In this document: positions 35,986 through 64,000 of the stretch, piece by piece
Numbering within the stretch: position 1 is the stretch's first letter
Layout of the letters: each line of letters opens with the position of its first letter
Source of the DNA: Mustelus asterias
Lineage: Eukaryota
Assembly: GCF_964213995.1 (NCBI RefSeq)
Contig: NC_135830.1
Span: 9,362,001 to 9,426,000, forward strand
Reading direction: 5' to 3'
DNA length: 64,000 nucleotides
Notes under the pieces: generated by a model
Databases searched by the model: none
What the model was told of the DNA's origin: nothing
The model's input: only the letters and a program-made list of their open reading frames with translations
Program-made: the position numbers and the translations under genes

Positions 35986-36415
35986 GTGTAACTTTCAATT
36001 TTCAAAACCCACCAACTCATCACTGTGGCTCCAATGTAATCTACGTACATTACATCCACAGGTTCCCTTTCATCCACAACACAACTGCGTCCTGTAAAGG
36101 ACTTGGGAATGGCCCCATTCTGTGGTGTAATTACTTTAAAATTCTTTGTTTCCCTCAGTTAAGCTCTCCTGATTTACACCCGGCCAGAGTTCTCCCCTCT
36201 TGTTATGCTGCTGGATAACACTTGTTTAAAACTTCCTACATTTCTTACCATGCCCCGTAGTAATCAAAGATTATGGAGCTAAAATATGAGATTTGTTTTC
36301 CTATGTACACAAGCTGTCTGACTTCCTGAGTTTTTCCAGCATTTTCACCTTTCACTGCAGAAATCTGTGCAGCTTTGAATGGCAATGGAAATATTTTCAT
36401 TGCACAACTTCCCCA

Positions 36416-36497
36416 GCCGAAGGGTATGATTCGGGCTGAGGATGTTAACATCATCAACTTGCGAGATATCCCGGGTTCAAAGGCCGAGCGAGAGCTC
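36416..36497 (+). pseudogene. Decayed tRNA-Pro paralogue with a 17-nt insert at position 37/38
   Basis: GGGTATGATTCGGGCTGAGGA[TGTTAACATCATCAACT]TGCGAGATATCCCGGGTTCAAA. The 5' acceptor strand is deleted. Confidence 0.65.
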
Positions 36498-40904: not shown

Positions 40905-40937
<33 letters not shown>

Positions 40938-43315: not shown

Positions 43316-45297
43316 ACGTATGCAGCTGTGCCCTTTACTGGTATTGTTATTGAAATTAGCAGCAAAGGAGCTGCAACAGTCCATCAGTTGGCTTGAGCCT
43401 GCTCCTTCACTGAATCAATTTATCCTGAACTGTGTAACAAGCAGGGATCACATCCAGTCAGAAACAGAATGAGCTGCAGTGAAGGACCAGCACCATTTAA
43501 ACTGCCCTTAACTTTGTCTGGTTCCCAATATCGTGCCAGAAATGACAAAAAAACCTCCTGTTGAATTTGCTCAGTCTTCACTTCAGGACACGAGGCGAGA
43601 TTGTGTTTTATATGTTCCACCAGGCAATAACTGACACTTGTTTTTACGGTTTGGATGAGAGCAACAAACCTCCATTACCTGACCACCAATCCAAACAGCA
43701 GTGAAAGTGTCAAACTCTAACCAACAGATCAGCTGCTTGTTGCCTGTTTGACAACTTGTTTTACACACACTGCATGTGTTGCTTTATTTTTCGCGCCAGG
43801 CCAGACTACATTCACCACAAGCAAGTCTCTGTTGCAATATCGCACCTTCTGTTTCCACCCCAGTGATACATTCAATTCGTGACAACAGACAACAGACATT
43901 CCACTTACAATTATTAATTCCACTTCCGACTGTTTGAAACGAGAGAGAACCTTTTCCAAATATTTCCATTGCAGCGTGAGGGAAAAGTTGAATAATTCAG
44001 TGTGAACGCCAAAATCTGATCTTTTTACCATCCAAATGTTACCTTACATCACCGTCTCTATTGTCAGCGCTTTGCAGCCTATCACTATCTTTCTGCTACT
44101 GTGTTTGTTCTTGACCTGTTGCGCATGTGACATTTCCAGCTGTGATGTAGACTTGCAAAACTCACTCGGCTCATATTAATAGATCTGCTTTCGATCAGAT
44201 AGTAAATCAGGTTATTTTTTAATAGTTCGCTGAGAGCTAAAAATAATCGTTCTCTGAACGGGAATTGAAAACAAACAACAATAGGGGAGTACTGAATACA
44301 ACCCACTGGACTCCCAGGGCCACGGGTGAACTGTGTTTTTCAAAATGACTTACCATATATCCCTTAATGTGTCCAGTTTGGATGGAACATAAGTGACTGC
44401 TTCAGCTAATGACAACACCGATTGTGCTTGCTGGGAAATGAAATCGACAGTGAGGTCAAATAGTCCCACAAGATGCTGAAGTGATCGTGGTATATAAAAT
44501 TCTAAATAGGATTGAAGAAAGTGAAATCTTTTTTCTTATGCGCAATCGGGAACACCATGTCAAATGTATAGGTTGAGAGGTGGTAGATTTAAAACTGAAA
44601 TGAGGAGGAACTGCTTCTCACTGAGGGTCGTGAATTTGTGGAATGCATTGCCGTATAGCGCGGTTGAGTCTGAATCATTAAATGATTTCAAGAAAGAGAC
44701 AGATATATTCCTGATAATTAAAGGGATGAGGGGATATTGGAACAGGTAGGGAGGTGGATTTGAGAACAGGGAGAGATCAGTCATGAACTGATTGCATGAC
44801 GGTTCAGGCTCGAAGCGCTGAATTTGCCCACTTCTGCTCCTAATTCTATTTCCTAAGTGTAAATTTCAATTTTTCAAACCCACCAACTCATCACTGTGGC
44901 TCCAATGTAATCTACGTACATTACATCCACAGGTTCCCCTTCATCCACAACACAACTGAGTCCTGTAAGGGACTGAGGAATGGCCCCATTCTGTGGTTTA
45001 ATTACTTTAAATTTCTTTGTTTCCCTCATTTAATCTCTCCTGATTTACACCCGCAAGAGGCCTCAAACCCTCTTGTTATGCTGCTGGATAACACGTGTTT
45101 AAAACTTCCTACATTTCTAAAAATTCCCAGTTGTTCCCAATGAAAGGTTATGGAGCTAAAATATAAGATTTGTTTTCCTGTGCACACAAGCTGTCTGGCT
45201 TTCTCAGTTTTTCCAGCATTTTCACCTTTCACTGCAGAAGTCTGAGCAGCTTTGGATGTCAATGGAAATATTTTCATTGAACAACATCCTCAGCAGC

Positions 45298-45389
45298 GGC
45301 TCGTTGGACGAGAGGTATGACTCGGGCCTGGGGAGTAAACATCTACAAACGTGCGAGCGATCTCGGGTTCACATGCCGGGCTCGATCCC
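45298..45389 (+). pseudogene. Decayed tRNA-Pro paralogue with an 18-nt insert at position 37/38
   Basis: GGCTCGTTGGACGAGAGGTATGACTCGGGCCTGGGG[AGTAAACATCTACAAACG]TGCGAGCGATCTCGGGTTCACATGCCGG. Confidence 0.72.
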
Positions 45390-46480
45390 TCAATCAGCTG
45401 TTGTTTCGTATTGGACAAGTCATAGGTTTTATAAATGTATTTTCAGTGCAAACGTTGGGATTAGTTTACGTGGGGTTTGGTTTGAGAACCTGAGCACACA
45501 GTGCAGGCAATCTATCAACACAACACTCACACAAGAAAATCAAGACATTAAAAGGTTAATATGCTTGTCGCCATTTACTTTATCTCTGTTCACCAGTTGA
45601 GCGGACCCCATGTTTGTTGGTAGAGACAGCTGGCTGTGTGATTATTGTTATTCATTCGTGGGTTGTGGATGTCTACCCCACTCGCTATTTCTGTTTTTCA
45701 TTGTCTCTATATATCTCCCTCAGACTCACTGACGATGTTTTTATTACATTGACATATTTTGCTCCTTGCTCTGTCCATTATTTCGCTGTCTGGGTGTAAG
45801 CGAGGTTCACTGGATTGATTTCTGCGTTTCTCGTGCGAGGAGAGAATCAGTGGGATGAGTCTGTTCGCTCTGGAGTTAAGAATAATCAGAGGTGATCTTA
45901 TTGAAAAGTCTGAAACTGGGAAACAGTTTGACAGTGTAAATGTTGAGTTCCCTCCACCCTGAGCTAAATTATTAAGAACAAAGAAAAATAGGGAGAATGA
46001 TGTAAGAGGAGTTTGGAATATTTGGGAGAGGTGAAGCTAAGAATTGGAAGATGTGAATAATGTAATTAATGATTCAGAGGAATGGATAGGGAATTTGGGG
46101 ATTCTGTCGGTGGATTCATTTTAAACTTTGAAATCAGAACAAGCTGAAGACACCAGATGGACAAACCGTATTTGTCTCCATGCATTTTAGGTTATAGAAC
46201 ATAGAACATAGAACAGTACAGCACAGAACAGGCCCTTCGGCCCACGATGTTGTGCCGAGCTTTATCTGAAACCAAGATCAAGCTATCCCACTCCCTATCA
46301 TCCTGGTGTGCTCCATGTGCCTATCCAATAACCGCTTAAATGTTTCTAAAGTGTCTGACTCCACTATCACTGCAGGCAGTCCATTCCACACCCCAACCAC
46401 TCTCTGCGTAAAGAACCTACCTCTGATATCCGTCCTGTATCTCCCACCACGAACCCTATAGTTATGCCCCCTTGTAATAG

Positions 46481-49048
46481 AACATAGAACATAGAACATA
46501 GAACATTACAGCGCAGAACAGGCCCTTCGGCCCACGATGTTGCACCGACCAGTTAAAAAAAAAACTGTGACCCTCCAACCTAAACCAATTTCTTTTCGTC
46601 CATGAACCTATCTACGGATCTCTTAAACGCCCCCAAACTAGGCGCATTTACTACTGATGCTGGCAGGGCATTCCAATCCCTCACCACCCTCTGGGTAAAG
46701 AACCTACCCCTGACATCGGTTCTATAACTACCCCCCCTCAATTTAAAGCCATGCCCCCTCGTGCTGGATTTCTCCATCAGAGGAAAAAGGCTATCACTAT
46801 CCACCCTATCTAAACCTCTAATCATCTTATATGTTTCAATAAGATCCCCTCTTAGCCGCCGCCTTTCCAGCGAAAACAATCCCAAATCCCTCAGCCTCTC
46901 CTCATAGGATCTCCCCTCCATACCAGGCAACATCCTGGTAAACCTCCTCTGCACCCTCTCCAAAGCCTCCACATCCTTCCTGTAATGTGGGGACCAGAAC
47001 TGCACACAGTACTCCAAGTGCGGCCGCACCAGAGTTGTGTACAGTTGCAACATAACGCTACGACTCCTAAATTCAATCCCCCTACCAATAAACGCCAAGA
47101 CACCATATGCCTTCTTAACAACCTTATCTACTTGATTCCCAACTTTCAGGGATCTATGCACAAATACACCTAGATCCCTCTGCTCCTCCACACTATTCAA
47201 AGTCCTCCCGTTAGCCCTATACTCAACACATCTGTTATTCCTACCAAAGTGAATTACCTCACACTTCTCCGCATTAAACTCCATCCGCCACCTCTCGGCC
47301 CAACTTTGCAACCTGTCTAAGTCTTCCTGCAAACTACGACACCCTTCCTCACTGTCTACCACACCACCGACTTTGGTGTCATCAGCAAATTTGCTAATCC
47401 ACCCAACTATACCCTCATCCAGATCATTAATAAATATTACAAACAGCAGTGGCCCCAAAACAGATCCCTGAGGTACACCACTTGTAACCGCACTCCATGA
47501 TGAATATTTACTATCAACCACCACCCTCTGTTTCCTATCCGCTAGCCAATTCCTGATCGAATTTCCTAGATCACCCCCAATCCCATACATCTGCATTTTC
47601 TGCAGAAGCCTACCATGGTGAACCTTATCAAACGCCTTACTAAAATCCATATATACCACGTCCACTGCCTTGCCCCCATCCACCTCCTTGGTCACTTTCT
47701 CAAAAAACTCAATAAGGTTAGTAAGGCACGACCTACCTGCCACAAAACCATGCTGACTATCACCTATCAATTCATTACTCTCCAAATAACTATAAATCCT
47801 ATCCCTTATAATTTTTTCCAACATCTTGCCGACAACAGAAGTGAGACTCACCGGTCTATAATTCCCGGGGAAGTCTCTGTTCCCCTTCTTAAACAATGGG
47901 ACAACATTCGCTAACCTCCAATCTTCTGGTACTATACCAGAGGCCAACGACGACCTGAAGATCAGAGCCAGAGGCTCTGCAATCACTTCTCTTGCCTCCC
48001 AGAGAATCCTTGGATAAATCCCATCCGGACCAGGGGATTTATCTATTTTCAGACCCTCCAGAATATCCTGCACATCCTCCTTATCAACTGTAATACTGTC
48101 TATTCTACTCCCCTGCAACCCAGTGTCCTCCTCAGCTATATTCATGTCCCCTTGCGTGAACACCGAAGAGAAATATTGGTTCAATGCTTCACCAATCTCC
48201 TCCGGTTCCACACATAACTTCCCTCTGCCATCTATAACTGGCCCTAAACTTGCCCTAACCAACCTTCTGTTCTTGACATACCTATAGAACGCCTTAGGAT
48301 TCTCTTTAACCCTATCCGCCAAAGTCTTCTCATGTCCCCTTTTAGCCCTTCTAAGCTCGCTCTTCAACTCCCTCTTAGCCAATCTAAAGCTTTCTAGTGC
48401 ACTACCCGAGTGCTCACGTCTCATCCGAACATAAGCCTCCTTTTTCTTTTTAACCAACAAAGAAACTTTTTTGGTGCACCACGGTTCCCTAGCCCTACCA
48501 ATTCCTCCTTGCCTGACAGGGACATACCTATCACAGACTCGCAGTAGCTGCTCCTTGAAAAAACTCCACATGTCGGACGTTCCCAGTCCCTGTAATCTCC
48601 TAGTCCAACCTATGTTTCCTAATTCTCTCCTAATAGCCTCATAATTACCCTTCCCCCAGCTAAAACCACTGGCCCGAGGTTCATGCCTATCCCTTTCCAT
48701 CACTAAGGTGAACGTAACCGAATTGTGGTCACTATCACCAAAATGCACACCAACTTCCAAGTCTAGCACCTGGTCTGGCTCATTTCCCAGCACCAGATCC
48801 AATATAGCCTCACCTCTAGTTGGCCTGTCTACATACTGAGTCAAAAAACCTTCCTGCACGCTTTGAACAAAAACTGACCCCTCTAACGAGCTAGAGCTAT
48901 AACAATTCCAGTCAATATTAGTCAAGTTAAAATCCCCCATAACAATTGCCCTATTACTTTCACTCCTAAGCAGGATTGACTCCGCAATCCTTCCCTCAAC
49001 CTCTCTAGAACTTTTAGGAGGTCTATAAAAGACTCCCAACAGGGTGAC
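46481..49048 (-). mobile_element. Nested 5'-truncated CR1 (inner element) with an uninterrupted ~820-aa ORF2 part
   Basis: ORF 46580-49054 (partial APE and full RT) with its own (ATAGAAC)n tail. It splits the outer ORF2 at RVDG/AITRGH. Confidence 0.92.
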
Positions 49049-51738
49049 CTCCATCCACCCGAGGAAATAGTCTTTGAACGTTCACTCTATCTATCCCCTT
49101 CATCATTTTATACACCTCTATTAAGTCTCCCCTCAGCCTCCTCCGCTCCAGAGAGAACAGCCCTAGCTCCCTCAACCTTTCCTCATATGACCTACCCTCC
49201 AAACCAGGCAGCATCCTGGTAAATCTCCTCTGCACTCCTTCCAGCGCTTCCACATCCTTCCTATAGTGAGGTGACCAGAACTGCACACAATATTCCAAAT
49301 GTGGTCTCACCATGGTCCTGTACAGTTGCAGCATAACCCCACGGCTCTTAAACTCCAACCCCCTGTTAATAAAAGGTAACACACTATAGGCCTTCTTCAC
49401 AGCTCTATCCACTTGACTGGCAACCTTTAGAGATCTGTGGATATGGACCCCAAGATCTCTCTGTTCCTCCACAGTCTTCAGAACCCTACCTTTGACCCTG
49501 TAATCCACATTTAAATTTGTCCTACCAAAATGAATCACCTCACATTTATCAGGGTTAAACTCCATTTGCCATTTTTCAGCCCAGCTTTGCATCCTTTCTA
49601 TGTCTCTTTGCAGCCTACAACAGCCCTCCACCTCATCCACTACTCCACCAATCTTGGTGTCATCAGCAAATTTACTGATCCACCCTTCAGCCCCCTCCTC
49701 TAAGTCATTAATAAAAATCACAAAGAGCAGAGGACCAAGCACTGATCCCTGCGGCACACCGCTAGCAACCTGCCTCCAATCCGAAAATTTTCCATCGACC
49801 ACCACCCTCTGTCTTCGGTCAGACAGCCAGTTGCCTATCCAATCGGCCAACTTTCCCTCTATCCCACACCTCCTCACTTTCATCATAAGCCGACCATGGG
49901 GGACCTTATCAAACGCCTTACTAAAATCCATGTATATGACATCAACTGCCCTACCTTCATCAACACACTTAGTTACCTCCTCAAAAAATTCTATCAAATT
50001 TGTGAGGCACGACTTGCCCTTCACGAATCCGTGCTGACTATCTCGGATTAATCCGCATCTTTCTAAATGGTCGTAAATCCCATCCCTAAGGACCCTTTCC
50101 ATCAATTTACCAACCACCGAAGTAAGACTAACCGGTCTATAATTACCAGGGTCATTTCTATTCCCTTTCTTAAACAGAGGAACAACATTCGCCATTCTCC
50201 AGTCCTCTGGCACCATCCCCGTGGACAGCGAGGACCCAAAGATCAACGCCAAAGGCTCTGCAATCTCATCCCTTGCCTCCCAAAGAATCCTAGGATACAT
50301 TTCATCAGGCCCAGGGGACTTATCGACCTTCAGTTTATTCAAAACTGCCAAGACATCCTCCCTCCGAACATCTATTTCCTCCAGCCTATTAGCCTGTAAC
50401 ACCTTCTCTTCCTCAAAAACATGGCCCCTCTCCTTGGTGAACACTGAAGAAAAGTATTCATTCATCACCTCGCCTATCTCTACTGACTCCATACACAAGT
50501 TCCCACTACTGTCCTTGACCGGCCCTAACCTCACCCTGGTCATTCTTTTATTCCTCACATAAGAGTAAAAAGCCTTGGGGTTTTCCTTGATCCGACCCGC
50601 CAAGGACTTCTCATGTCCCCTCCTAGCTCTCCTAAGCCCCTTTTTCAGCTCATTCCTTGCTAACTTGTAACCCTCAATCGAGCCATCTGAACCTTGTTTC
50701 CTCATCCCTACATAAGCTTCCCTCTTCCTTTTCACAAGACATTCCACCTCTTTTGTGAACCATGGTTCCCTCACTCGGCCATTTCCTCCCTGCCTGACAG
50801 GAACATACCTATCAAGGACATCCAGTATTTGTTCCTTGAAAAAATTCCACTTTTCATTAGTTCCTTTCTCTGACAGTTTCTGTTCCCAACTTATGCCCCT
50901 AATTTTTGCCTAATCGCATCATAATTACCCCTCCCCCAATTGTAAACCTTGCCCTGCCGTACGGCCCTATCCCTCTCCATTGCAATAACAAAAGACACCG
51001 AATTGTGGTCACTATCTCCAAATTGCTCTCCCACAACCAAATCTAACACTTGGCCCGGTTCATTTCCCAGTACCAAATCCAATGTGGCCTCACCTCTAGT
51101 CGGCCCATCCACATATTGTGTCAGGAAACCCTCCCGCACACACTGCACAAAAACTGCCCCATCCAAACTATTTGACCTACAAAGGTTCCAATCAATATTT
51201 GGAAAGTTAAAGTCCCCCATGACAACTACCCTGTGACCCCCACACATATCCATAATCTGCTTAGCAATTTCTTCCTCCACATCTCTATTACTATTTGGGG
51301 GCCTATAGTAAACTCCTAGCAACGTGACCGCTCCTTTCCTATTTCTAACTTCAGCCCATATTACCTCAGTGTGCAGATCCCCCACGAAGTGCCTTTCCGC
51401 AGCCGTTAAACTATCCTTGATTAACAATGCCACTCCTCCACCTCTTTTACCAGCTTCCCTACACTTAGTGAAACATCTATACCCCGGAACGTCCAACAAC
51501 CATTCCTGTCCTTGTTCTACCCACGTCTCCGTAATGGCCACAACATCGTAGTCCCAAGTACCAATCCACGCCCCAAGTTCATCTACCTTGTTCCGGATGC
51601 TCCTTGCATTGAAGTAGACACACTTCAACCCACCTTCCTGTCTACCAGTACCCACCCTTGACCCTGATACCTTCCCCAATACCTCACCACCCTCACTGAC
51701 TTCTGGACTACAACTCCCTTTCCCACTCCCCTGACAAA

Positions 51739-52665
51739 TTAGTTTAAACCCCCCTGAAGAGCCGTAACAAATTTCCCTCCGAGGATATTGGTGCCCCTCT
51801 GGTTCAGGTGCATCCCGTCCTGTTTGTACAGGTCCCACCTTCCCCAGAACGTGTTCCAATTATCCACGTATCTGAAACCCTCCCTCCTACACCATCCCTG
51901 CAACCACATATTTAACTGCACTCTCTCCCTGTTCCTCAACTCGCTATCACGTGGTACCGGCAACGTACCAGAGATGACCACATGTTTCGTCTTGGCTCTC
52001 AGCTTCCAGCCCAGCTCCAGAAATTCCTGCTTTAAATCCCCGTCCCTTCTCTTACCTATGTCATTGGTACCAATGTGCACCACGACTTGTGACTGTTTCC
52101 CCTCCCCCTTCAGAATCTGGAAAACACGGTCTGAGACATCACGGACCTTGGCATCCGGTAGGCAACATACCATCCGTGAGTCTCTTTTGCTGCCACAGAA
52201 CCTCCTATCTATCCCTCTAACTAACGAGTCCCCAATAACTATCGCCCTCCCGCTCTCCCCCTTTCCCTCCCGAGCCACAGAGACGGACACAGTGCTGGAG
52301 ATCCTCTCACTGCGGCTCCCCACTGGTATGTCATCCCCCTCAACCGTATCCAAAGCGGAATACTTGTTGCTAAGGGGAACGACCACCGGGGATCCCTGCA
52401 CGGACTGCTTCCTCCCAGCCCCTCTCACCGTCACCCATCTGTTTTCAATCCTCGGAGTAACTGTATTCCTAAAGCTTGTGTCTATGGCCATCTCTGCGTC
52501 CCTGATGATCCTAAGTTCATCCAACTCCAGCTCCAGTTCCCTAACACGGTTTTGGAGGAGCTGCAGATGGGTGCACTTCCCACAGGTGTAATCAGTAGGG
52601 ACACTGTCGTCGTCCCTCACCTCAAACATAGTGCAAGAGGAACATTGCACTGCCTGCACACCCAT
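51739..52665 (-). CDS. CR1 ORF1 (Cys motif, coiled coil and SGNH esterase-like domain)
   Basis: CSSC..CGKC, GDSLVR, VHIGTND and DGMHLN. Confidence 0.88.
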   Translation of the reverse strand: MGVQAVQCSSCTMFEVRDDDSVPTDYTCGKCTHLQLLQNRVRELELELDELRIIRDAEMAIDTSFRNTVTPRIENRWVTVRGAGRKQSVQGSPVVVPLSNKYSALDTVEGDDIPVGSRSERISSTVSVSVAREGKGESGRAIVIGDSLVRGIDRRFCGSKRDSRMVCCLPDAKVRDVSDRVFQILKGEGKQSQVVVHIGTNDIGKRRDGDLKQEFLELGWKLRAKTKHVVISGTLPVPRDSELRNRERVQLNMWLQGWCRREGFRYVDNWNTFWGRWDLYKQDGMHLNQRGTNILGGKFVTALQGGLN

Positions 52666-53326: not shown

Positions 53327-53399
53327 GCCCGGCCAGCTCAGTCGGTAGAGCATGAGACTCTTAATCTCAGGGTCGTGGGTTCGGGCCCCACGTTGGGCG
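53327..53399 (+). tRNA. tRNA-Lys(CTT), probably impaired (U8C and A58G)
   Basis: GCCCGGCCAGCTCAGTCGGTAGAGCATGAGACTCTTAATCTCAGGGTCGTGGGTTCGGGCCCCACGTTGGGCG. Confidence 0.8.
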
Positions 53400-56300
53400 A
53401 CATTGATTGTTAAACTTTGCCTCATTCCTGGGTGAATTCCAGATCTCCGTTCCTCCAGAAGTGTCACCGCTCAAACTGAGTCTTTCTCCTTTCTGCGTTG
53501 TTTATCGCACAGTTGTGGGTTTCTGACTGAAAACTGCCTCCGGTTCACTGGAAGCGGGGAGTTCAGCGCTGAACTCAGCGAGAGGTTTTGTTCTTATTTA
53601 TTATGAGATTTAAACCCAGATCGGCGAGATTGTGTCGTGGGAACAATAATCATCTCCATTGTAATTTAATCACTCCAGCCTTCCATCCGATCAAAAGACC
53701 GTTTGTTCTTTCCTCCTCTCCCTCTCTATTTTCCTTGACTCTGTACTTGTTTGTAAACCATTCAATCACTAATTTTTTCCAGTTAGGGTCAAAGGTCAGC
53801 TTCCTGAATCATTCACTCTCTTTCCCTCTCCACAGAAGCTGTTGAAGCCGATGAGAGCTTCCAACATTTTCTGTTTTGAGGTGGGATTCGCAGCAACTAC
53901 AAAACCTAGTTTTGGATCACAGTGGATCACTTTTCTCTGACTGAATCTTACCTGTTTGAACAGTTGAAAGGCTGAGGTTTTAAATAATACGACACCAGAC
54001 TATGTCACCCTGTTTGACATGAAATGAAACAAAATGAGAATTAATCATTTCTTAATATGCTGCTAATGCAATATATATTTTGTTGTCAATGCCAGCATTT
54101 GTTGTCCATCCCTATTTCCCTCTGAACTGAGTATTTTGCTGGGCCATTTCAGAGGGCAGTTAAGAGTCAATCACATTGCCTTTCCTCTGGAGTCCCATGG
54201 AGGCCAGAAAGGAGAATGATGGCAGATTTCCTTCTGCAAGATGTGTTTTCATGACAATCAGAAAACAAAGCTTCGTTACTGAGACTAGCTTTCACTTCCG
54301 TTTCAGTTCTAGACTGTGGTGGGATCGTGACCTGTGAGCCTGGGCCACAGGATGCATACTCCACTGATTTTACCACGATGTCACAGTCTTCCCGGAAGAG
54401 TGGAAGTTTAAATCCTTCACATGGAATCAAACGACTTAATTTCACATTGAAAACAAACATTTAAAGCAGTGTACTGTTGAAATCAGTGTCGTACACTCAG
54501 GCTACCGGGGAACTGACGAGATATCTATTGCTTTCATTCAAAGACAGAAAAATGTGGTGAATCCTCAGCGTGAGTGATGAAGGAGCTGCGCTCCGAAAGC
54601 TCGTGATTTCAAACAAACCTGTTGCACTTTAACCTGGTGTTGTGAGAATTCTTACCGGGTCCTGAAGGGCATTTCATTTACAATTCGCAAAAAGATTATT
54701 TTTATAAAATTAACAGCTTTCAGCAAATCGCACCGCAATCACATTGCAGACGGTGCAGTGAGTTACTCTCCTGGCCTCGTTGCATCAGCCCCAGAGGACG
54801 ATTTCTCAAGAACACAAAACGCTCAGCGATAAAGAGGTCGGAGGCTTCATTCATCAGGGATTACCCGAGAGCACGTGACCTTTCTCCCAAATCACACACG
54901 CACACAATTGCTCAATAATGCTCAGGTCACTTCGATTTCCGTGTTGGTTTCGTCGATAGAATTCGCTGCTTTAACTGCCATGGTTTGGGTTCGATTCACG
55001 GTTAGGGAATGATGATTCATTGCTCTCGTGCAACACATGAATTAAGGAGAGTGGATATTGCTTCCTGGTCGAAAACGGGAGAGATACTTGTGGCAGGTTG
55101 AACAGGAAGAAGGAAAAATCTGCCCCATTCCACAATCCTGTCAATTACCCATAACAATTAATATTTACATTCGGAAGTCTTACAACACCAGGTCTATTTG
55201 GAGTCAGGAGCTTTCGGGGCGCTGATAGAATAAAGCAAATTGATTTTATTATCGGAGCAAATGAACCTGTTGGACTTTAACATGATGCTGTGAGACTTCT
55301 TATTGTGCCCACCCCAGTCCAACGCCGGTATCTCGACATCATATTTACATTGCAATTGCTGGTACCAACTGTCAGAATGAGTGAGTTACTTGCTACTGCA
55401 TTGAATTTCACTGTAGCTCACCACATTCAAAGAGTAATGTTTGTTATAAACCTTATTGTGGTAAATCTGTTGAAAACCTTCAGCTTATCACAGCTCCGCT
55501 TTCATCACACTGGAAGCTAATGTGAAAAGATGAATAATTTCAAAGCTGAACAACGTGCACAAGACTGGAAGGAGAATGCGATTGTGCATAATTGGCACTG
55601 TGCATATTCCTGTATTCAGTCTATGGGAGAACCAGGAGAATGAAATCCTCATGGTCCAGTGCTTAGGATTTGGCGCTTTCAGGGTCATTGATCGGCTTCA
55701 ATATGCTAAGATTTAAAGTTTTTGATATTCCATTTAACAAACCTGAGTTGTTTCCTGATCGAAAACAGCTCTGTCAGAAGCAGTGGAGTTAGATCTATAT
55801 TTGTGTCCGAATTGGAAATGTCACATGGGCAACAGTTCAAGAACAAACACAGATAGTGAAGGACAGTGATAGGCTGCAAAGCGCTGCCAATAGATCAGGA
55901 ATCTGTCTGTCCCAACCTGAAATGTGTTCAATGAGGGAAACACACAGCAAGTCGGCAAAGATCAGTGAAGTGAGGACTGAGTTAAACTTTCACCAGAATG
56001 CTGTTTTTATAATTGCAAAGTCCTGAGATTGGGAGCAGAGAGTTGACATTTGAGGCGTTTCAGTTCTTTGAGAGATGAATGCCTGCCGTGTTTTACAAGG
56101 TAAGTTTCACAGGATCAGGAATGATGAGATTGGTGGGTTTCGGAAATTAAAATTTACACGTGAACAGCTTGTTGGGACTATTTCATTTATCGTTGCCGTC
56201 TTGCGGTGTGTTTTATGTTCTGATAAAACCTGTATTTATAATACAAGCATAAGATGGTGGAAATTCTCAGCAGGTTTGGCAGAATCTGTGGACCCGCATC

Positions 56301-56886
56301 AAATTCGAAACACTTCCATTTGTCACCTGTGTTCCTGAAATATACTGATTATTGTGTTCAAAAAAACTGATAATACCTTTTCAAAACAGCTGTCCCATCT
56401 CGAAGTGTTCTTAAATATTAAGGAATCACATTATCTCACAGCCATGTGGCATTTACAATTCCCCAAAGCTTGAATAATATTCTGCAACTGCAGTCATGGA
56501 GAAAGAGATAAAATTCGGAACAAATGCTATTTTCTAAATCTTATGTTAGATCAATGACTCTGCCACATGGCTAAGGTTTTCAACAGAATTATAATTCTAC
56601 AAAGCAAGGATTTAAATTGCAATCAGACTGCACTGTTTGATATTCTAGGCCGGTCACATTGGTCATGAGCAGAGCTTCTGGATTGTAGGGGTTAACATGT
56701 TCATTTCATATACGAAAGGCTCCCCGATTTAAAATAAGGTCGAAACATAATTGAAATTAACATTTTTAAAGATTTTCCCCGATTCTAGATCGTTGTTGCA
56801 TATGAACTGAATTGGAGCAAACAAAATGTTAGTTTGTACTTCATCATTGATTGCAAAAATGCCCTGAGGGAGTATAGCTCATTGAT

Positions 56887-57812
56887 ATTAAGGGAATATA
56901 GCTTAGGGGTCGGGCATTTGACTGCAAGTCAAGACGTTTCTGCATTCAAATCGGATGCCTCTTTCCGCGCTTAATAGATTTTGTTTTCAATCTAAACTGT
57001 CTTTCATTGGCTGGAAAGCAGGAAAATGGAAACCCAAGGTCAAACATGGGTTGAAGTTTCGAGTTCAGTTATTGAGTTTAATAATATTTGAAATATATAA
57101 ATTGTTACAAATAATATGTTAGAGATAAATGTTCAATAAACTAACGTCGGCTAACAGTAGAGGCAGAAACACACGATAAGTTTTTTTTAGTGTTGCCCAA
57201 GGACTCAGTGGCACTCAAAAACCGAGAGACAATGAAAGCAGATGGAGAGAAAAAAAAGTGGAAGCGCTACCCTTGGATGTTTTCGAACCACCAACTTTTC
57301 CATTAACAGCCGAACGCGCTGGTCAATTGCGCCACAGAGACTGACACATCTGTAGCCCACGTGGCATCTTAAATCATAGTGTTAAAGTATTGGCTGCAAA
57401 TTCGATGCCAATTCAATTTTCACCAAACCTGACACAGAAAGACGAAATTATGGCATCGTTTACAAATCTAAGCATGTATGTTTTACTATTTTACCCCACA
57501 GTGTTGCTGTGGTGTAATAGTCAATCCCTTCTCCTAACATGGGAAAATGGCCGTTTGATAGAGCAGGGAGGGACAGATTGTTCCCACTGATTGGGCTCAG
57601 TAACAGAGGACTGGGATTGAAGGTCATGAAATGTTTGCATTGATATAGAACCTCTCCCGACTAGTGGACGTCACAAAGCGCTTTCCAGCCAATGAAGGGC
57701 AGTTTAGATTGAAAACAAAATCTATTAAGTGCGGAAGGAGGCATCCGATTTGAATGCAGAAGCGTCTTGACTTGCAGTCAAATGCCCGACCCCTAAGCTA
57801 TATTCCCTTAAT
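56887..57812. repeat. Inverted repeat with 133-bp arms (56887-57019 and 57680-57812), each arm containing a tRNA-Cys pseudogene
   Basis: The arms differ at 5 positions by manual alignment. Each contains GCATTTGACTGCAAGTCAAGA. Confidence 0.88.
57265..57341 (-). pseudogene. tRNA-Asn(GTT) pseudogene, paralogue of 40881-40954
   Basis: ..TTAACAGCCGAACGCGCTGGTCAATTGCGCCACAGAGAC with a decayed 3' half. Its flanks are nearly identical to 40630-41310. Confidence 0.75.
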
Positions 57813-58931
57813 GTCTAACCTCCGTTTTGTCGCTCCTTTGTCCTCTGTCTCGCGTGGTCTATGGTTATGTTTGTTCCTCTGTGTCCGTCACTATGCTTAC
57901 GTGCCTCATGGGCGTGGACATGTTTTTTACCATCACAAATTCTATTCACTTACTTTATAAACCTTCATGGTAAATGTACGGAACAGCAAGAAGTTTAAAG
58001 TTGTGAGATGAAATTGACCCTTTCTGTTATTTGTGAGTGGAGGGTGCTTATTGACTGAGTTACCGTACGTTCCATTGTGTAAAGTGATTAACATTTTTCT
58101 TTGATCAACATTTAAACAGACAGCGGATTCACTCGGTGTGATGGTGGGTTCCAGTTCTATATCTGCGATCACAGCATCAATTCATGCCACTTACTGTCAA
58201 CCCAATATTTCTAATAGTTTGGATGACCCAATATTTCTAACACGTTGGATGTTTAATCTAATTTACTTCGTTTTATATTTCATTATTTTCATCTCAGATC
58301 TATCTCCACCAGAGGCAAGTCTCTCTTTCAAAATGTTCTGTTCAGGTAGAACAGAAGTTAGTCCTTCATCCAATGGCAACAAGGATTACTTTTCGCTGCA
58401 GCATGAAAGCGGTAAAGAGATGAAATAGTCAGACAAGCTGCTCATGTGTTCCTCTCAATTTCCCAAATCCACCAACCTCATCACTGCAGCTCCTGTGAAA
58501 TCGCTGTACAGTACACCCACCGGCTCCCTATTATCCACAGCACACGTGACTTCTTCAAAGATTTTGTGCATGGTCTCATTCTGCGGTGCAAACATTCTAT
58601 GATACTCTGCTTTCCTCACGCTCAGACCATGGACTGTAAACAAGTTGTTCATTTATCTCTCTTGAATTGTACCCGGTCAGGGCCCTTTCCTGTTGTTATG
58701 TTTCCTCGCTCCTCCTGGATTTCACTTGTTTAAAACTTCATACATTTCCAAACTTTACCAGCTTAAAGGGTAAAATGAAATGTTATGAAGGTGTAAGAAT
58801 ACAGTCCTTTCCCTGTGTGCACTTGCTGCCTGGCTTCCTGAGTTTCTCCAGCGCTTCCAGCTTTCAGGGCAGCTGTCTGATCAGATTTGTATGACAATAT
58901 ATATCCGTATTTGAGGAGCTCCCGCAACAGC

Positions 58932-59021
58932 GGCTCGTTGGTCTAGGGGTATGATTCTCGCTTTGGGTGTTGTGATGTGCAAAGCTGCGAGAGGTCCCGG
59001 GTTCAATTCCCGGACGAGCCC
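58932..59021 (+). tRNA. tRNA-Pro(TGG) with an 18-nt intron (58968-58985)
   Basis: Exons GGCTCGTTGGTCTAGGGGTATGATTCTCGCTTTGGG and TGCGAGAGGTCCCGGGTTCAATTCCCGGACGAGCCC form a 72-nt canonical vertebrate tRNA-Pro. The insert TGTTGTGATGTGCAAAGC lies one nt 3' of the anticodon. Confidence 0.9.
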
Positions 59022-59677
59022 CATTGTTGTTGTTTGCAATCGCAAAGTCCTGTTCATTTCTTTGCCGTGCACACGGCAGGATGAGTTTTTCCGCGGTTTG
59101 GTTTGGGAAACTGACAACACAAGGAATCTGACAACACAAGGAATCTAACAACACAACGCACTCACAGGCAGTTCAAGATGTTTTCAAAAGTTGACTCTTC
59201 TTTTGGACCTTCTCTTTATCCCTAGTCAACAATTCAGAGGACCCAATGCTTGTGGGTTCCGGCCGCTGGCTTTGTGTACATTGTTATTCATTCATACGAT
59301 GTGGCTGACTCCCCCACGCACTGTCTATATCTGTCTCTCTTTGTTTCTGTGTAACGACCTCATTATTTTGCACTCTCTCAGTCTCTCACTGTGCCTCTAT
59401 CCACTTTCCATAGTGTGTTCTTGTTTCCCTCTATTCTCGCGCTGTCTGTGTAACGAAGGTTCAATGGATTGATTGCTGTGATGAGACAGTTGCCCTTGGA
59501 GGAGAGATTCATTGTGGTTACCCTTTTCTCTCTAGAGTTTGGAATAATAAACAGTGATCCCATTGACAAGTCTGCAACGGCGAGACTGTTTGATAGTGTG
59601 CATGCTGAGGGATTGTTTCCACCGCTCCCCCCAGTTCTCCTCCTCCCCACCCCCACCACCACCCGCTGGGGTAAACA

Positions 59678-59975
59678 CAGTACGAAGTCTCACAACACCA
59701 GGTTAAAGTCCAACAGGTTTATTTGGTAACACAAGCCACAAGCTTACGGAGCACTGCCCCTTCATCAGGTGAGTGGGAGTTGTGTTCACAAACAGGGCAT
59801 ATATAGACACAAACTCAATTTACAAAATAATGGTTGGAATGCGAGTCTTTACAGGTAATCAGGTCTTAAATGTACAGACATTGTGAGTGGAGAGAGGGTT
59901 AAGCACAGGTTAAAGAGGTGTGTATTGTCTCCAGCCAGGATGGTTGGTGAGATATTGCAAGCCCAGGCAAGTCGT
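59678..59975 (-). mobile_element. Penelope terminal-repeat fragment
   Basis: Homologous to 1117-1400. Confidence 0.8.
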
Positions 59976-60545
59976 TGACTATCTCTAATAATTCATTCCG
60001 TCTCTAAATGCCTGTAGATCCTGTCTCTCAAAATACCTTCCAACAACTTACCCATCACAGATGTGAGGCTCACTGGCCTGTAGTTCCCAGGCTTTTCCCT
60101 GCAGCCCTTTTTAAACAAGCACAACATTTACCACCCTCCAATCTTCAGGCACCTCACCTGTGACTATCAATGATTCGAACATCTCTGCTAGGGGACCCTC
60201 AATTTCCTCCTTAGCCTCCCACAATGTCCTGGGATATACTTCATCAGGTCCCGGGATTTATCCACCTCGATGCGCGTTAAGACTTCCAGCACCTCCTTAT
60301 CTGTAATATGTACAGTCCTCAAGACATCACTATTTATTTCCTGAAGTTCCCTAACATCTATGCTTTTCTCTACAGCAAATACTGATGAGAAATATTCATT
60401 TAGCACCTCACCCATCTCTTGTGGATCCGCACACAGATGATCTTGTTGATCCTTAAGAGGCCCTACTCTCTCCCTTGCTACGCTTTTGTCCTTTCTGTCT
60501 TTGTCGAAGCTCTTTGGATTCTCCTTTGCCTTATCTGCCAAAACA
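59976..60545 (-). mobile_element. CR1 ORF2 internal fragment
   Basis: KENPKSF..VGPLKDQ..LNEYFSSVF. Confidence 0.8.
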
Positions 60546-60624
60546 AGTATTTTGGCAGATAGGTTGCACATCTGCCTCATTGATGTGGTTGGTGGGTTAT
60601 GAAAATTGAAAGTTACACTTAGGA

Positions 60625-60900
60625 ACATAGGAATTAAGATCAGCAGTGGGCAAATTCAGCGCTTCGAGCCTGCTCCAGCATTCAATCAGTTCATGGCTGA
60701 TCTTTCCCTGGTCTCAAATCCACTGCCCCTTATATGTTAATTCATTTTGTATTGGAAATATGTCTGTCTCCTTCTTTAAATCTTTTTAATGATTCAGACT
60801 CCACCGTTCTATGGGGCAGCGAGTTCCAAAGATCGACGACCATTAGCAATAAGTAGTTCCCCAGCATCTCCGTTTTAAATCTACCGCCTCTCTACCTATC
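60625..60900 (-). mobile_element. Old CR1 3' tail fragment
   Basis: Reverse complement is similar to 35710-35985. Confidence 0.65.
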
Positions 60901-61199
60901 CATGTGACAGTAGGTTGGTTCTATTCCTTCCCCACAGATGCTGTCAGATCAGTTGAGATTTCCAAGCATTTTCTGTTTTTTGCACAGATTCCAGCATTCA
61001 TTGTATTTTGCTTTTTTGTGCAATTGTGACCTCTTGATCTCGATTGCCCAATAAGAAGAAACATTTTGTCTATGTTCACTCTATCATCCCTCGTAAAATT
61101 TTATGTAATTCGATCGCTTCAGCATCTTGTGGGACGATTTCGCCTCAGTGTCAATTTCATGCCCCAGCAAACTCCCAGCGACTGTATACCGCTGTGCCG

Positions 61200-62785
61200 C
61201 CAGCTAGCAGAGATGGCAGCGCAGTGGTATACAATCGGGAGTGAGTTGCCCTGGGAATTCTTAACATCGACTCTGTCGTCTCATGGCTTCAGGTTAAACA
61301 TGTGGAAGGAAACCTCTTACTGGATACCAGGTGCCGCCCTCCTTCGGCTCATGAATCAGTGATCCTCCATGTTGAAATACACTTGGAGGAAGCACTGAGG
61401 GTGGCAAGGGCACAGAATGTACTCTGGATGGGGGATTTCAATGTCCACCACCGAGAATGGCTCAGTCGCAGCAATACTGATCGAGCTGGTCGGGTCCTAA
61501 AAGATGTCACTGTTAGACTTGATCTGCAGCAGCTGGTGAAGGAACCAACAAGAGGAAATAACATACTTGACCTCATCCTTACCAATCTGCCGGCTGCAGA
61601 TGCAACTGTCCACGACGGTATCCGCAACAGTGATCACTGCATAATCCGTGTGGAGACGAAGTCCCACCTTTGCATTGAGAATAGCCTCCATTGTGTTATG
61701 TGGCACTATCACCGTGTTTAATGGGACAGACTTCGAACCGATCTCGGAACTCAAGACTAGGCATGCATGGGGCGTTGTGGGCCACGAACAGCAGGGGAAC
61801 TGTACTCCAGCACTATCTGCAATCTCATGGCCCAGAATATACCCCACTTAACCATTACCATCAAGTCAGGGAATCAACTCTGGTTCAACTGAGAGTGCAA
61901 GGGTGTTGGGGCGGTGAGGGGGGGGATGTGTGTGTGTGTGGGGGGGGGGGGGGGGGGGGGGGGGAGGGGGACGCGCAGGAGTAGCACCAGGCATACCAAA
62001 CTGTGAGGTGTCAACCTGGAGAAACTACCAAACAGGACTCTGTACATGCCAAATGGCAAAAACAATAAGTGATAGACAGAGGTAAGCGATCCCACAACCA
62101 ACAGATCAGAGCTAACCTCTTCAGTCCTTCCACATCCAGTCGTGAATGGTGGTGGACAATTAAACAACTCACTGGAGGAAGAAGATCCACAAATATCCTC
62201 ATCCTCACTGATGGTGCAGCCCAGCACCTCATTGCAAAAGATAAACCTGAAGAATTCGAAGCAATCTTCAGCCAGGAGTGTCGACTGGATGATCCATCTC
62301 GGCCTCCTCCAGTGGTCCCCAGCATCTCAAATGCTCGTCTCCAGCCAATTCGATGCACTTCATTTGATACCAAGAAACGGTTGGAGGCACTGGACACTGG
62401 AAAGGCAATGGAGCCTGATAACATTCCGGCAAAAGTACTTGTGCTGTCGAACTTACCGCTCCCCCAGCCAAGTTGTTCTCGGACAATTACAACACTGGCA
62501 TCTTCGCAACAATGTGGAAAATTGCCCAGGGATTTCCTGCACAAAAAAAGGCACGGCAAATCCAACTAGCCAATTATCGCCAAATTAGACGACTCTCCAT
62601 CATCTGTAAAGCGATGGCAGGGTCGTCAACAGACCTCCTCAGCAAAGCCCAGTTTGAGTTTCGCCAGGGTGACTCAGCTGCAGTCCTCATTTGACCTTTT
62701 GTTCAAACATGGACAATGGAGCTGAATTCCCGAGGTGAGCTGAGAGTGATAGGCCTTGACAACAAGGCCGCATTTGACCAAGTGT
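61200..62785 (+). mobile_element. Degenerate LINE (APE-RT) of a family distinct from the young CR1s; further pieces at ~63610-64000
   Basis: WMGDFNVHH, EPTRGNNILDLILTN, SDH, NYRQI and LDNKAAFDQV, with many frameshifts. Confidence 0.8.
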
Positions 62786-62832
62786 TTAAATTACCACGTG
62801 TAACTTGCGGCTATAAACTAAAGTTGAAAACA

Positions 62833-62905
62833 AGGCTCCAGCGAGGATTGAACTCGCGACATCTGGTTTACGAGACCAGTGCTCTAACCACTGAGCTATG
62901 GAGCC
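62833..62905 (-). tRNA. tRNA-Thr(CGT)
   Basis: GGCTCCATAGCTCAGTGGTTAGAGCACTGGTCTCGTAAACCAGATGTCGCGAGTTCAATCCTCGCTGGAGCCT, with a T4 terminator just downstream. Confidence 0.92.
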
Positions 62906-64000
62906 AATCCTTTGCAATTAGCTTGCAATAAATGTACAATAATCAGTGGAACAGACTGCATTTTCAGATGGAAATAGATATGCTTGAGCGGGAGAGCAGG
63001 GAGTTAGAATATGTGGCGATAAAGGGGCAGAATTTGACATGTGCCAGTTACTTCAAACGATCAATGTTTGCCGTGTGCCTGCCGATAAATTCTTCTTCTG
63101 AGCTTATACTTGTTGTTACATCTCTGACTTTTCCACGTCTGATACAATTCATCCAGTTTGAAGATTAACCCTTGTTTCTCCCTTCACAGACGATGTGAGG
63201 CCTAATTTGATTTAATGAAGAGTTAAACAAAAAAATGTTCAGCCCGTGACTGGGAATCAATCCCGGGCACGGCGCCGAATCCTGACCAATAGAAAAGCTC
63301 ATATGAGAGATTTGCAATTAGACCATAATCATCTATTTTCCCACTGCCTCATTTCATGTCATTGTCTAAACTTTGCCAGATAGTCACACAGCCAATCTAT
63401 CATTTATAAGCAATTACAGCAAATACGTGGCCAATCCACCTAACATGCACAACTGGACACTGTGGGAGGAAACTTGAACACCGGCAGGAAACTCAGGCAC
63501 ACACGGGGAGAACGTGCAAACGCCACACAATTACCGAAGGCTGGAATTGAAGCCGGGTCCCTGGCGCTGCGAAGCCACCGCGGCGCCCACTATGCGACAA
63601 TCACTTCCACTGCAGCGTTGATTGGAAGACAAAGATGTTTGTGGATACATTGGAAAAAACGAGAGCTCCCGGCACTGGCAATCTTCCAGCAATTTTAATG
63701 AAGCGTTGTGCTCCTGAACTTGCCGCGCTCCGAGTCAAGCAGTTTCAGTACAACTGCATCACTGGCAAACTGCAAATCAAATCAAGACAATTACCACCAG
63801 TCTGCTCTCGGTCATCAGGAATGTGATAGAAGGGGTGAACAAACATTGTGTCAAAAGCACTGACTTCGCAGTAACCAGCTAACAGTTAATCAGAGAAGTC
63901 TGAAATCTGCAACAAAGAGAAACCTTCTCCAGTCAGCCTTTGTTCACACATGGACAAAAGAGCTGTACTCCAGAGGTGTGACGAATGTGGTTGCCTGTGA

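What the first reader, a model, noticed from the sequence alone, without database searches (positions are those of the whole stretch)
58932..59021. Intron-containing tRNA-Pro(UGG) in a vertebrate, with an intact anticodon-intron pair
Seen: the exons rejoin into an essentially canonical 72-nt vertebrate tRNA-Pro. The 18-nt insert (58968-58985) sits at the canonical 37/38 site. Its 3' end CAAA-GC can pair with U32-U33-U34-G35 of the anticodon loop. This gives the U32:A anticodon-intron pair at the third-last intron base and a 3-nt bulge at the 3' splice site, the geometry recognised by the TSEN endonuclease. Established: well-supported vertebrate tRNA introns are essentially limited to Tyr-GUA, Ile-UAU, Leu-CAA and Arg-UCU, whereas Pro-UGG introns are typical of fungi. 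Inference: this lineage has an additional spliced tRNA family, which could yield circular intron RNAs or allow intron-dependent modification.
Basis: partly seen in the sequence, partly recalled or inferred. Interest (0 to 1): 0.88.

Follow-up and report, generated by a model that had tools for sequence, protein, structure and literature searches.

The report
Shark proline tRNA gene with intron
A shark proline tRNA gene carries a short intron at the standard tRNA splice position, an interruption that mammals have only in four other tRNA families, and it looks like a maintained gene rather than a wreck, though nobody has yet shown that it is transcribed and spliced.

Summary
Window 58932-59021 (+) is a tRNA-Pro(TGG) gene with an 18-nt insert (58968-58985) exactly between positions 37 and 38 (ARAGORN intron mode; Rfam tRNA 47.9 bits). 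The intron's bases -6 to -3 pair with G35-U34-U33-U32. This gives the U32:A anticodon-intron pair and a 3-nt bulge at the 3' splice site. A strict 4-bp helix in this register arises in 0.06% of intron shuffles.

The insert is not private to this locus. Two decayed Pro paralogues in the window (45298-45389, 36408-36496) carry a 17-18-nt insert at the same site, inside about 1-kb segmental duplicates whose flanks are about 30% diverged. This copy keeps all 20 tested stem pairs, which argues for selection.

The host is a shark. The same scan noted this before on other DNA of the same genome: 90 unchecked notes hold the words tRNA, Pro and intron, and their titles name TGG, AGG and CGG copies.

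Weak points: the first T>=4 terminator lies 65 nt downstream, and the canonical splice fold is 2.7 kcal/mol above the predicted optimum. I read it as a new member of a known kind. [quoted passage not shown]

The parts
58932..58967 (+). 5' exon of tRNA-Pro(TGG): tRNA positions 1-37 (36 nt, no position 17); anticodon TGG at 58964-58966, G37 at 58967
   Evidence: ARAGORN -i; Rfam tRNA alignment; sequence
58968..58985 (+). 18-nt intron at the canonical 37/38 site
   Evidence: ARAGORN -i reports i(38,18); cmscan treats it as an insertion in the anticodon loop; a single match in the window at up to 3 mismatches
58980..58983 (+). intron bases -6 to -3, complementary to G35, U34, U33 and U32 (58962-58965); the A at 58983 is the intron partner of the U32:A anticodon-intron pair
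   Evidence: sequence; energy of the structure with this helix; chance estimate; the same 4-base stretch stands at -6 to -3 in the decayed paralogue at 45298
58984..58986 (+). predicted 3-nt bulge holding the 3' splice site (last two intron bases plus U38)
   Evidence: follows from the helix above and the anticodon stem; inferred, not shown
58986..59021 (+). 3' exon: tRNA positions 38-73 with discriminator C at 59021; B-box-like T arm at 59000-59010
   Evidence: unique in the window at up to 3 mismatches
58896..58904 (+). A/T-rich TATA-like run about 28-36 nt upstream of the gene; the paralogues are also A/T-rich at the same place
   Evidence: sequence and alignment; a role in transcription is only inferred
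59086..59090 (+). first run of four or more T downstream (T5), 65 nt after the gene end; candidate Pol III terminator
58446..59623 (+). about 1.2-kb segment around the gene, homologous to 35986-37079 and 45081-45947: an old segmental duplication of a tRNA-cluster unit
   Evidence: blastn of 56000-64000 against the window, 65-66% identity; flank K2P distance 0.37-0.41
45298..45389 (+). decayed tRNA-Pro paralogue with an 18-nt insert at the same site (anticodon position now reads GGG; anticodon stem broken)
   Evidence: nhmmer E 1.1e-7; alignments
36408..36496 (+). decayed tRNA-Pro paralogue with a 17-nt insert at the same site (anticodon position reads AGG; 14 nt missing at the 5' end in the alignment)
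   Evidence: nhmmer E 2.3e-5; alignments

Best explanation
This is a genuine nuclear tRNA-Pro(UGG) gene of a shark, kept intact by selection and interrupted by a canonical 18-nt tRNA intron between positions 37 and 38. The intron was already present in the ancestral Pro gene before the old segmental duplications that produced the two decayed copies in this window. It is therefore a trait of a Pro gene lineage, not a lesion of one locus. Inferred mechanism: Pol III transcribes the gene from its internal A and B boxes and probably runs on to the T5 at +65. RNase P and RNase Z trim the ends. The tRNA splicing endonuclease (TSEN) measures from the mature domain and uses the U32:A anticodon-intron pair and the 3-nt bulge to cut after G37 and before U38. 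RTCB ligase joins the halves and may circularise the 18-mer. Modifications that need a normal anticodon loop, such as m1G37, would then have to follow splicing. Because vertebrate Pro isoacceptors differ essentially at position 34, one intron gain could spread to the TGG, AGG and CGG genes through anticodon changes and gene conversion. Shown here: the anatomy, the shared ancestry of the insert, and the intactness of this copy against diverged flanks. Inferred: transcription, cleavage, ligation and any function of the intron.
For: Gene and intron calls: ARAGORN -i and Rfam tRNA at 47.9 bits. The cloverleaf has 20 of 20 tested pairs standard. The features named as typical of eukaryotic tRNA introns in Phizicky and Hopper 2023 (passages) are all present in the sequence: the 37/38 site, short length, complementarity to N33-N35, and an A-I pair between C32/U32 and the antepenultimate intron A/G. 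A strict helix in register appears in 0.06% of intron shuffles. Two paralogues carry a 17-18-nt insert at the same site within homologous flanks. Flanks of this copy versus the paralogues have K2P 0.37-0.41. With 15% neutral change per site, only 0.65% of 50,000 simulations keep all 20 stem pairs. Dead tRNA copies in this cluster decay faster than their flanks: 21/78 versus 65/621 differences, Fisher p 1.6e-4; for an Asn relic, 14/74 versus 58/614. That makes the intactness of this copy more telling. The gene sits in a cluster of high-scoring tRNA genes. Unchecked notes of this scan report intron-bearing Pro(TGG), Pro(AGG) and Pro(CGG) genes on many other pieces of the genome. These are leads only.
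Against: No T>=4 run lies within 64 nt downstream; the first is a T5 at +65. Four of the six neighbouring tRNA genes have one within 19 nt. Orioli et al. 2011 (PMC3141230; only the start of the abstract seen in a listing) report that many human tRNA genes lack T>=4 within 50 bp. The predicted minimum-energy fold of the anticodon arm (-9.0 kcal/mol) buries both splice sites in a short helix. The canonical anticodon-intron fold is 2.7 kcal/mol worse, at -6.3. The whole pre-tRNA folds no better than shuffles (z -1.21). The intron is only 9/18 identical to that of the paralogue at 45298, so nothing beyond the 3' helix looks constrained. There is no expression or splicing evidence. Whether intronless Pro genes exist in this genome is unknown. 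Recent gene conversion from another copy could also explain the intact exons.
Confidence: 0.65

Rival explanations
1. The locus is structurally intact but silent or poorly expressed. It would be a redundant member of a decaying tRNA cluster that has lost its proximal terminator and is on its way to becoming a pseudogene like its two neighbours. The intron-bearing family may still be real elsewhere in the genome.
For: The first T>=4 is at +65, and the two decayed paralogues have a T4 at +38/+39 where this copy has none. The cluster holds several relics: Pro at 45298 and 36408, a Lys-like relic at 37335, and an Asn-like relic near 57268-57341. Two other high-scoring genes in the cluster also lack near terminators: Thr-TGT at +93 and Lys-CTT with none in 120 nt.
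Against: All 20 tested stem pairs, the anticodon loop, the T loop and the A-I helix are intact, although flanks differ by about 30% from the paralogues and dead copies here decay faster than their flanks. Distant terminators are reported as common among human tRNA genes (PMC3141230, abstract start only).
Confidence: 0.2
2. The insert is not a functional intron. The Pro-like copies with inserts would be a family of non-functional tRNA-like sequences, multiplied passively with tandem or segmental tRNA-cluster duplications, while intronless genes do the decoding.
For: The copies in this window spread by DNA-level duplication of about 1-kb units. The Squalomix preprint reports very large numbers of tRNA loci, including intron-containing ones, in sharks and links them to genome expansion (passages). 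The canonical fold is not the minimum-energy fold.
Against: A non-functional sequence would not keep a perfect cloverleaf and an in-register Watson-Crick A-I helix over a divergence of K2P about 0.4. The insert length (17-18 nt) and site are kept in all three copies. According to unchecked notes, intact copies exist for three anticodons on many chromosomes.
Confidence: 0.12
3. The feature is a tRNA-derived SINE head, or an assembly or sequencing artefact.
For: Shark genomes are repeat-rich, and this window is full of LINE reverse-transcriptase ORFs. An interspersed repeat starts about 650 nt downstream, at 59666-59969.
Against: Homology to the paralogues extends at least 330 nt upstream of the tRNA 5' end as well as downstream, which retroposition from an internal Pol III promoter would not give. 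No SINE body or tail follows the gene. Three independently diverged copies show the insert, which excludes a local assembly error.
Confidence: 0.03

Closest known systems
Mammalian intron-bearing tRNA families (Tyr-GUA, Ile-UAU, Arg-UCU, Leu-CAA)
   Same: Both have a short intron between N37 and N38, an anticodon-intron pair, and expected processing by TSEN and RTCB. The intron occurs as a property of gene families (PMC10275265 passages).
   Different: The isotype differs. Pro is not among the human families listed there (Tyr 13/13, Ile-UAU 5/5, Arg-UCU 5/6, Leu-CAA 5/7 genes). No splicing data exist for the shark gene.
Saccharomyces cerevisiae tRNA-Pro(UGG) genes, all intron-containing (10 genes; Yoshihisa 2014, PMC4090602)
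   Same: Same isoacceptor and same canonical intron position.
   Different: This is very probably an independent gain. Yeast splices in the cytoplasm with a different ligase, Trl1 (same review).
Lineage-specific tRNA intron gains and spread by anticodon switching in yeasts (L. thermotolerans Ala-UGC and Leu-CAG, K. lactis Gly-UCC; Yoshihisa 2014, section 18)
   Same: An intron appears in an isodecoder in one lineage only. It can spread to another anticodon by a change at position 34, and copies are homogenised by gene conversion.
   Different: Those cases are fungal. This would be a vertebrate case, and an old one (flank K2P about 0.4 between intron-bearing copies).
[quoted passage not shown]
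   Same: [quoted passage not shown] This locus is very probably one of that class.
   Different: The passages I read name no isotype, no intron anatomy and no evidence of function. Figure 3A and any supplements were not visible to me and may hold isotype counts.
Archaeal bulge-helix-bulge introns
   Same: A 4-bp helix with a 3-nt bulge at the 3' cut site.
   Different: The 5' site is not in a clean 3-nt bulge closed by a second stable helix. The inner pairs possible here are all weak wobble pairs. This is the looser eukaryotic bulge-helix-loop arrangement.

Membership tests
Canonical eukaryotic (TSEN-type) tRNA intron | [quoted passage not shown] | tested here: met
   ARAGORN -i reports i(38,18); cmscan places the insertion in the anticodon loop; definition from PMC10275265
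Canonical eukaryotic (TSEN-type) tRNA intron | Short length (14-60 nt in yeast, up to 133 nt elsewhere) | tested here: met
   18 nt; range from PMC10275265
Canonical eukaryotic (TSEN-type) tRNA intron | Intron complementary to N33-N35, extended by an A-I pair between C32/U32 and the antepenultimate intron A/G | tested here: met
   U32:A, U33:A, U34:A and G35:C with intron bases -3 to -6; 0.06% of intron shuffles reach this
Canonical eukaryotic (TSEN-type) tRNA intron | Both cut sites single-stranded (bulge-helix-loop) in the folded precursor | tested here: inconclusive
   The canonical conformer exists at -6.3 kcal/mol, but the predicted minimum for the anticodon arm (-9.0) pairs both cut sites. 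Thermodynamic prediction ignores tertiary structure and protein binding.
Canonical eukaryotic (TSEN-type) tRNA intron | Intact mature domain for the endonuclease's ruler | tested here: met
   20 of 20 imposed stem pairs are standard; full-length tRNA model match
Canonical eukaryotic (TSEN-type) tRNA intron | Intron shared by members of the gene family | tested here: inconclusive
   Both other Pro-like loci in the window carry it, but they are decayed. Genome-wide support comes only from unchecked notes.
Canonical eukaryotic (TSEN-type) tRNA intron | Precursor is cleaved by TSEN and the exons are ligated in vivo | not testable with these tools
Active Pol III tRNA gene | Internal A and B boxes | tested here: met
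   D-arm and T-arm columns match the tRNA consensus in the cmscan alignment. With the intron, the boxes are 18 nt further apart than in an intronless gene.
Active Pol III tRNA gene | Run of four or more T shortly after the 3' end | tested here: not met
   The first T>=4 is at +65. Neighbours: Leu +14, Cys +19, Asn +11, Thr-CGT +3, Thr-TGT +93, Lys none within 120.
Active Pol III tRNA gene | Transcript or Pol III occupancy observed | not testable with these tools
tRNA-derived SINE | Copies share sequence from the tRNA 5' end onward (tRNA head, body, tail) but not upstream | tested here: not met
   Upstream flanks are homologous over at least 330 nt (69-71% identity), as are downstream flanks
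tRNA pseudogene | Broken stems, lost anticodon loop or truncation | tested here: not met
   Not met for 58932-59021. Met for the paralogues at 45298 and 36408, which have a broken anticodon stem and a 5' deletion.

The most novel reading that the evidence does not exclude
In sharks the whole proline tRNA family (UGG, AGG and CGG) acquired one canonical intron long ago. A flank divergence of K2P about 0.4 between intron-bearing copies suggests on the order of 100 million years or more at slow shark rates, which is my own rough estimate. The family has kept the intron under selection. If so, tRNA splicing would be required for all proline decoding in these vertebrates. This would be the first documented gain of an intron-bearing tRNA family within vertebrates, and a natural system for asking why tRNA introns persist, for example through the ordering of m1G37 or position-34 modification after splicing, or through abundant 18-nt circular or linear intron RNAs.
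Probability: 0.35. Interest if true: 0.65.

Novelty: new member of a known kind. Interest (0 to 1): 0.5.

Why it matters
tRNA introns in animals are usually treated as a small, fixed set (Tyr, Ile-UAU, Leu-CAA and, in vertebrates, Arg-UCU). Gains of new intron-bearing families have been argued mainly from yeasts (Yoshihisa 2014, section 18). An old, selectively kept intron in shark Pro genes would show that the set can grow within vertebrates. It would give a dated example of how an intron spreads across isoacceptors that share one body. It would also widen the natural substrate range of vertebrate TSEN, the enzyme mutated in pontocerebellar hypoplasia. [quoted passage not shown] It also matters for annotation, because default tRNA searches miss or mislabel the gene.

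Tried and rejected
1. Paralogues by exact or near-exact pattern. Three patterns at up to 3 mismatches found only the gene itself (1 of 1 match each). The decayed copies appeared only with nhmmer.

2. Rfam at the gathering threshold on the whole window missed the gene: 8 matches, none at 58932. A permissive search of the local region found it.

3. Public runs. The 90-nt gene gave only 7 sampled words. All 24 listed runs held at most 2 of the 7, and none held half or more. No run could be said to hold the intron.

No other shark genome could therefore be examined. Cross-species conservation is untested.

6. SINE, artefact and private-lesion readings were rejected on flank homology and the shared insert.

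7. ARAGORN's tRNA-Leu(taa) with a 543-nt intron at 32428-33067 was rejected as spurious. It has no Rfam support.

8. Literature, seven counted paper searches:
- "tRNA intron" + "tRNA-Pro" + "vertebrates": 2 papers.
- "intron-containing tRNA" + "shark": 5 papers.
- A six-term search, at least 3 terms required: 96 papers, 20 listed.
- A six-term chondrichthyan search, badly designed: none of the 15 listed held "tRNA intron".
- "intron-containing" + "tRNA-Pro" + "tRNAscan-SE" + "fish": 4 papers, none relevant.
- "tRNA intron" + "shark": 10 papers, none relevant.
- A terminator search.
None of the texts I saw describes an intron in a vertebrate tRNA-Pro gene. Subscription journals (including Schmidt and Matera 2020), GtRNAdb and RefSeq annotation tables, figures, and supplementary files were not visible, and any of them may list such genes.

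Full report
**What is there.** Window 58932-59021 (+) reads as a tRNA gene whose anticodon loop is interrupted. ARAGORN without intron mode calls it an unassignable tRNA with a four-base anticodon. With introns allowed it calls tRNA-Pro (tgg) with an 18-nt intron after raw position 37. Rfam's tRNA model did not report it at the gathering threshold on the whole window: 8 matches, none here. A permissive search of 58850-59120 matched the whole model, positions 1-71, at 47.9 bits and E 1.6e-9, with 21 nt of the anticodon loop treated as an insertion. The exons are 58932-58967 and 58986-59021 and the intron is 58968-58985. The anticodon TGG is at 58964-58966 and the discriminator C is at 59021. 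An imposed cloverleaf (7 acceptor, 3 D, 5 anticodon and 5 T pairs) has 20 of 20 standard pairs. cmscan flags one non-standard D-stem pair, 13:22.

**Intron anatomy.** Intron bases -6 to -3 (58980-58983) are the Watson-Crick complement of G35, U34, U33 and U32. The antepenultimate intron base A therefore pairs with U32, and the last two intron bases plus U38 are left as a 3-nt bulge containing the 3' cut site. The 5' cut site after G37 falls in the remaining loop. Phizicky and Hopper (PMC10275265, passages read) describe exactly this arrangement for eukaryotic tRNA introns: complementarity to N33-N35, extended by an anticodon-intron pair between C32/U32 and the antepenultimate intron A/G, giving a bulge-helix-loop.

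This is more than chance would give if strict pairing is required. A strict helix in register appears in 0.06% of 200,000 shuffles of the intron and in 0.5% of 200,000 random 18-mers. With G-U pairs allowed the figure is 6-8%.

Thermodynamic prediction is less kind. The minimum-energy fold of the anticodon arm (-9.0 kcal/mol) pairs G36, G37 and the first intron base with the last two intron bases and U38, which buries both cut sites. The canonical fold lies at -6.3. The whole precursor folds no better than shuffled sequence, z -1.21. The last six intron bases could also invade the anticodon stem. Prediction ignores tertiary structure and the enzyme, so I count this as inconclusive rather than negative.

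**The insert is inherited, not private.** Pattern searches at up to 3 mismatches found only the gene itself. nhmmer found two diverged Pro-like loci, at 45298-45389 (E 1.1e-7) and 36408-36496 (E 2.3e-5), and both have an insert of 18 and 17 nt at the same place. Their flanks align with those of the gene on both sides. A blastn of 56000-64000 against the window shows that 58446-59623 matches 35986-37079 and 45081-45947 at 65-66% identity. These are old DNA-level duplicates of a tRNA-cluster unit.

In a three-way alignment, the flanks of the gene differ from either paralogue by K2P 0.37-0.41 (identity 0.69-0.71), while the two paralogues differ from each other by 0.11. The paralogues are therefore one old dead lineage that was duplicated later. 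They share a broken anticodon stem, and the anticodon position reads AGG in one and GGG in the other, against TGG in the intact gene. The same 4-base stretch stands at -6 to -3 in the copy at 45298, so the A-I helix looks ancestral. Otherwise the intron is only 9/18 identical between the gene and that copy, as expected for a weakly constrained tRNA intron. The intron thus predates a duplication whose neutral divergence is about 0.4 substitutions per site. It also occurs in copies that differ at position 34.

**Is this copy maintained?** If half of the roughly 30% flank difference fell on this lineage, 15% of exon sites should have changed. In 50,000 simulations at that rate, all 20 stem pairs stayed standard in 0.65%; the figure is 3.5% at a 10% rate. 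Dead tRNA copies in this cluster also decay faster than their flanks. Between the two Pro relics there are 21 differences in 78 tRNA-part sites against 65 in 621 flank sites (Fisher p 1.6e-4). An Asn relic near 57268-57341 shows 14/74 against 58/614. The intact state therefore points to purifying selection, or to homogenisation with functional copies, on an intron-bearing gene.

**Points against full function.** The 3' flank is T-rich but interrupted. The first run of four or more T is a T5 at 59086-59090, 65 nt after the gene. Leu, Cys, Asn and Thr-CGT in the same window have one at +14, +19, +11 and +3. Thr-TGT has its first at +93 and Lys-CTT has none within 120 nt. The two relics have a T4 at +38/+39 where this copy has none. 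Orioli et al. [quoted passage not shown] An A/T-rich, TATA-like run lies at 58896-58904, and the relics are also A/T-rich there. Its role is only inferred.

**Host and setting.** A 342-aa intronless GPCR ORF at 17290-18315 (-) has 1734 relatives at E<=1e-20. Of the 120 listed rows, 119 carry a source's name and each of those names a shark species: Mustelus, Chiloscyllium, Heterodontus, Scyliorhinus, Rhincodon, Hemiscyllium, Stegostoma, Heptranchias, Pristiophorus or Carcharodon. The best match is 72% identical. The remaining row, from a JGI metagenome, carries no name. The window is a cluster of tRNA genes (Leu-TAG, Cys, Asn, Thr-TGT, Lys-CTT, Pro, Thr-CGT) among LINE reverse-transcriptase ORFs.

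**What the scan noted before.** Ninety unchecked first-reader notes on this genome hold the words tRNA, Pro and intron, and none has been followed up. The titles shown to me, up to 8 per look-up, name TGG, AGG and CGG copies with 18-19-nt inserts at 37/38 on many other pieces. One note on this same window names the two decayed paralogues, and I verified that one. I could not read the other windows, so those notes are leads. If they hold, all three Pro isoacceptors carry the intron.

**Expression could not be tested.** The run search with the 90-nt gene had only 7 sampled words. 

**Comparison with what is known.** In humans, introns are reported in Tyr-GUA (13/13 genes), Ile-UAU (5/5), Arg-UCU (5/6) and Leu-CAA (5/7) (PMC10275265, passage). 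Pro-UGG is intron-bearing in budding yeast, with 10 genes (PMC4090602, passage). Yoshihisa's review (sections 5 and 18 read) argues that tRNA introns are gained and lost in single lineages. It also argues that an intron can move to another anticodon by a position-34 change, and that copies of one origin are homogenised, intron included. That is the pattern seen here. [quoted passage not shown] The text I saw names no isotype, and its Figure 3A and supplements were not visible. My other searches turned up no description of a vertebrate Pro intron. Subscription reviews and database tables were out of reach, so this is absence in what I could search, not proof of absence.

**Verdict.** The best reading (0.65) is a maintained shark tRNA-Pro(UGG) gene with an old, canonical, TSEN-type intron that belongs to a Pro gene lineage. 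The alternatives are a structurally intact but weakly expressed copy (0.2), a passively amplified non-functional family (0.12), and a SINE or artefact (0.03). It is a new member of a known kind, the canonical tRNA intron, in an isotype not reported for vertebrates in the texts I could search. Interest is moderate (0.5). It would surprise tRNA specialists somewhat and gives content to a published shark-wide count, but the mechanism is standard and function is unproven.

Noticed in passing
window 45298-45389 vs 36408-36496, and about 57268-57341 vs 40881-40954: Dead tRNA copies differ from each other two to three times more in the tRNA part than in their flanks. Pro relics: 21/78 against 65/621 differences, Fisher p 1.6e-4. 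Asn relic: 14/74 against 58/614. This is consistent with a raised mutation rate over tRNA genes (transcription-associated or CpG decay; that explanation is recalled, not tested).
   Followed up: partly
window 17290-18315 (-): An intact intronless GPCR ORF (342 aa, Pfam 7tm_1 in its relatives) belongs to a very large family: 1734 relatives at E<=1e-20. Of the 120 listed, 119 are named by their source and all of those are from sharks, mostly labelled 'probable G-protein coupled receptor 139'. The best identity is 72%. This looks like a lineage-specific receptor expansion.
   Followed up: partly
window 53327-53399 (+) and 37335-37407 (+): tRNA-Lys(CTT) scores 53.8 bits and has no T>=4 within 120 nt. 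A weak tRNA-like match (33.4 bits) about 0.9 kb after the Pro relic at 36408 has a 3' flank clearly homologous to that of the Lys gene. The duplicated unit therefore seems to be Pro followed by Lys. LINE ORFs at 46580-52665 separate the pair at 45298/53327.
   Followed up: partly
window 56884-57019 and 57680-57815: A 136-nt inverted repeat (95.6% identity) brackets a 90%-identical copy (57018-57703) of the Asn-gene region 40629-41312. It may be a rearrangement or a transposon-like structure carrying a tRNA relic.
   Followed up: no
window 32428-33067 (+): ARAGORN in intron mode predicts a tRNA-Leu(taa) with a 543-nt intron. There is no Rfam support, so it is probably spurious.
   Followed up: no
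window 16150-16222 (+) and 16940-17171: A borderline tRNA-like match (29.2 bits against a threshold of 29) lies near a 232-base N stretch.
   Followed up: no
window 59666-59969 and 63429-63578: Interspersed repeats of about 270-300 nt and about 100-150 nt have several 67-85% identical copies across the window in both orientations. They were not classified.
   Followed up: no
window 1494-2897, 11722-15635, 24985-27853, 46580-52665: Several LINE-type elements have long endonuclease and reverse-transcriptase ORFs (up to 940 aa) and an upstream ORF1-like frame. At least one looks full-length. Classified by eye only.
   Followed up: no
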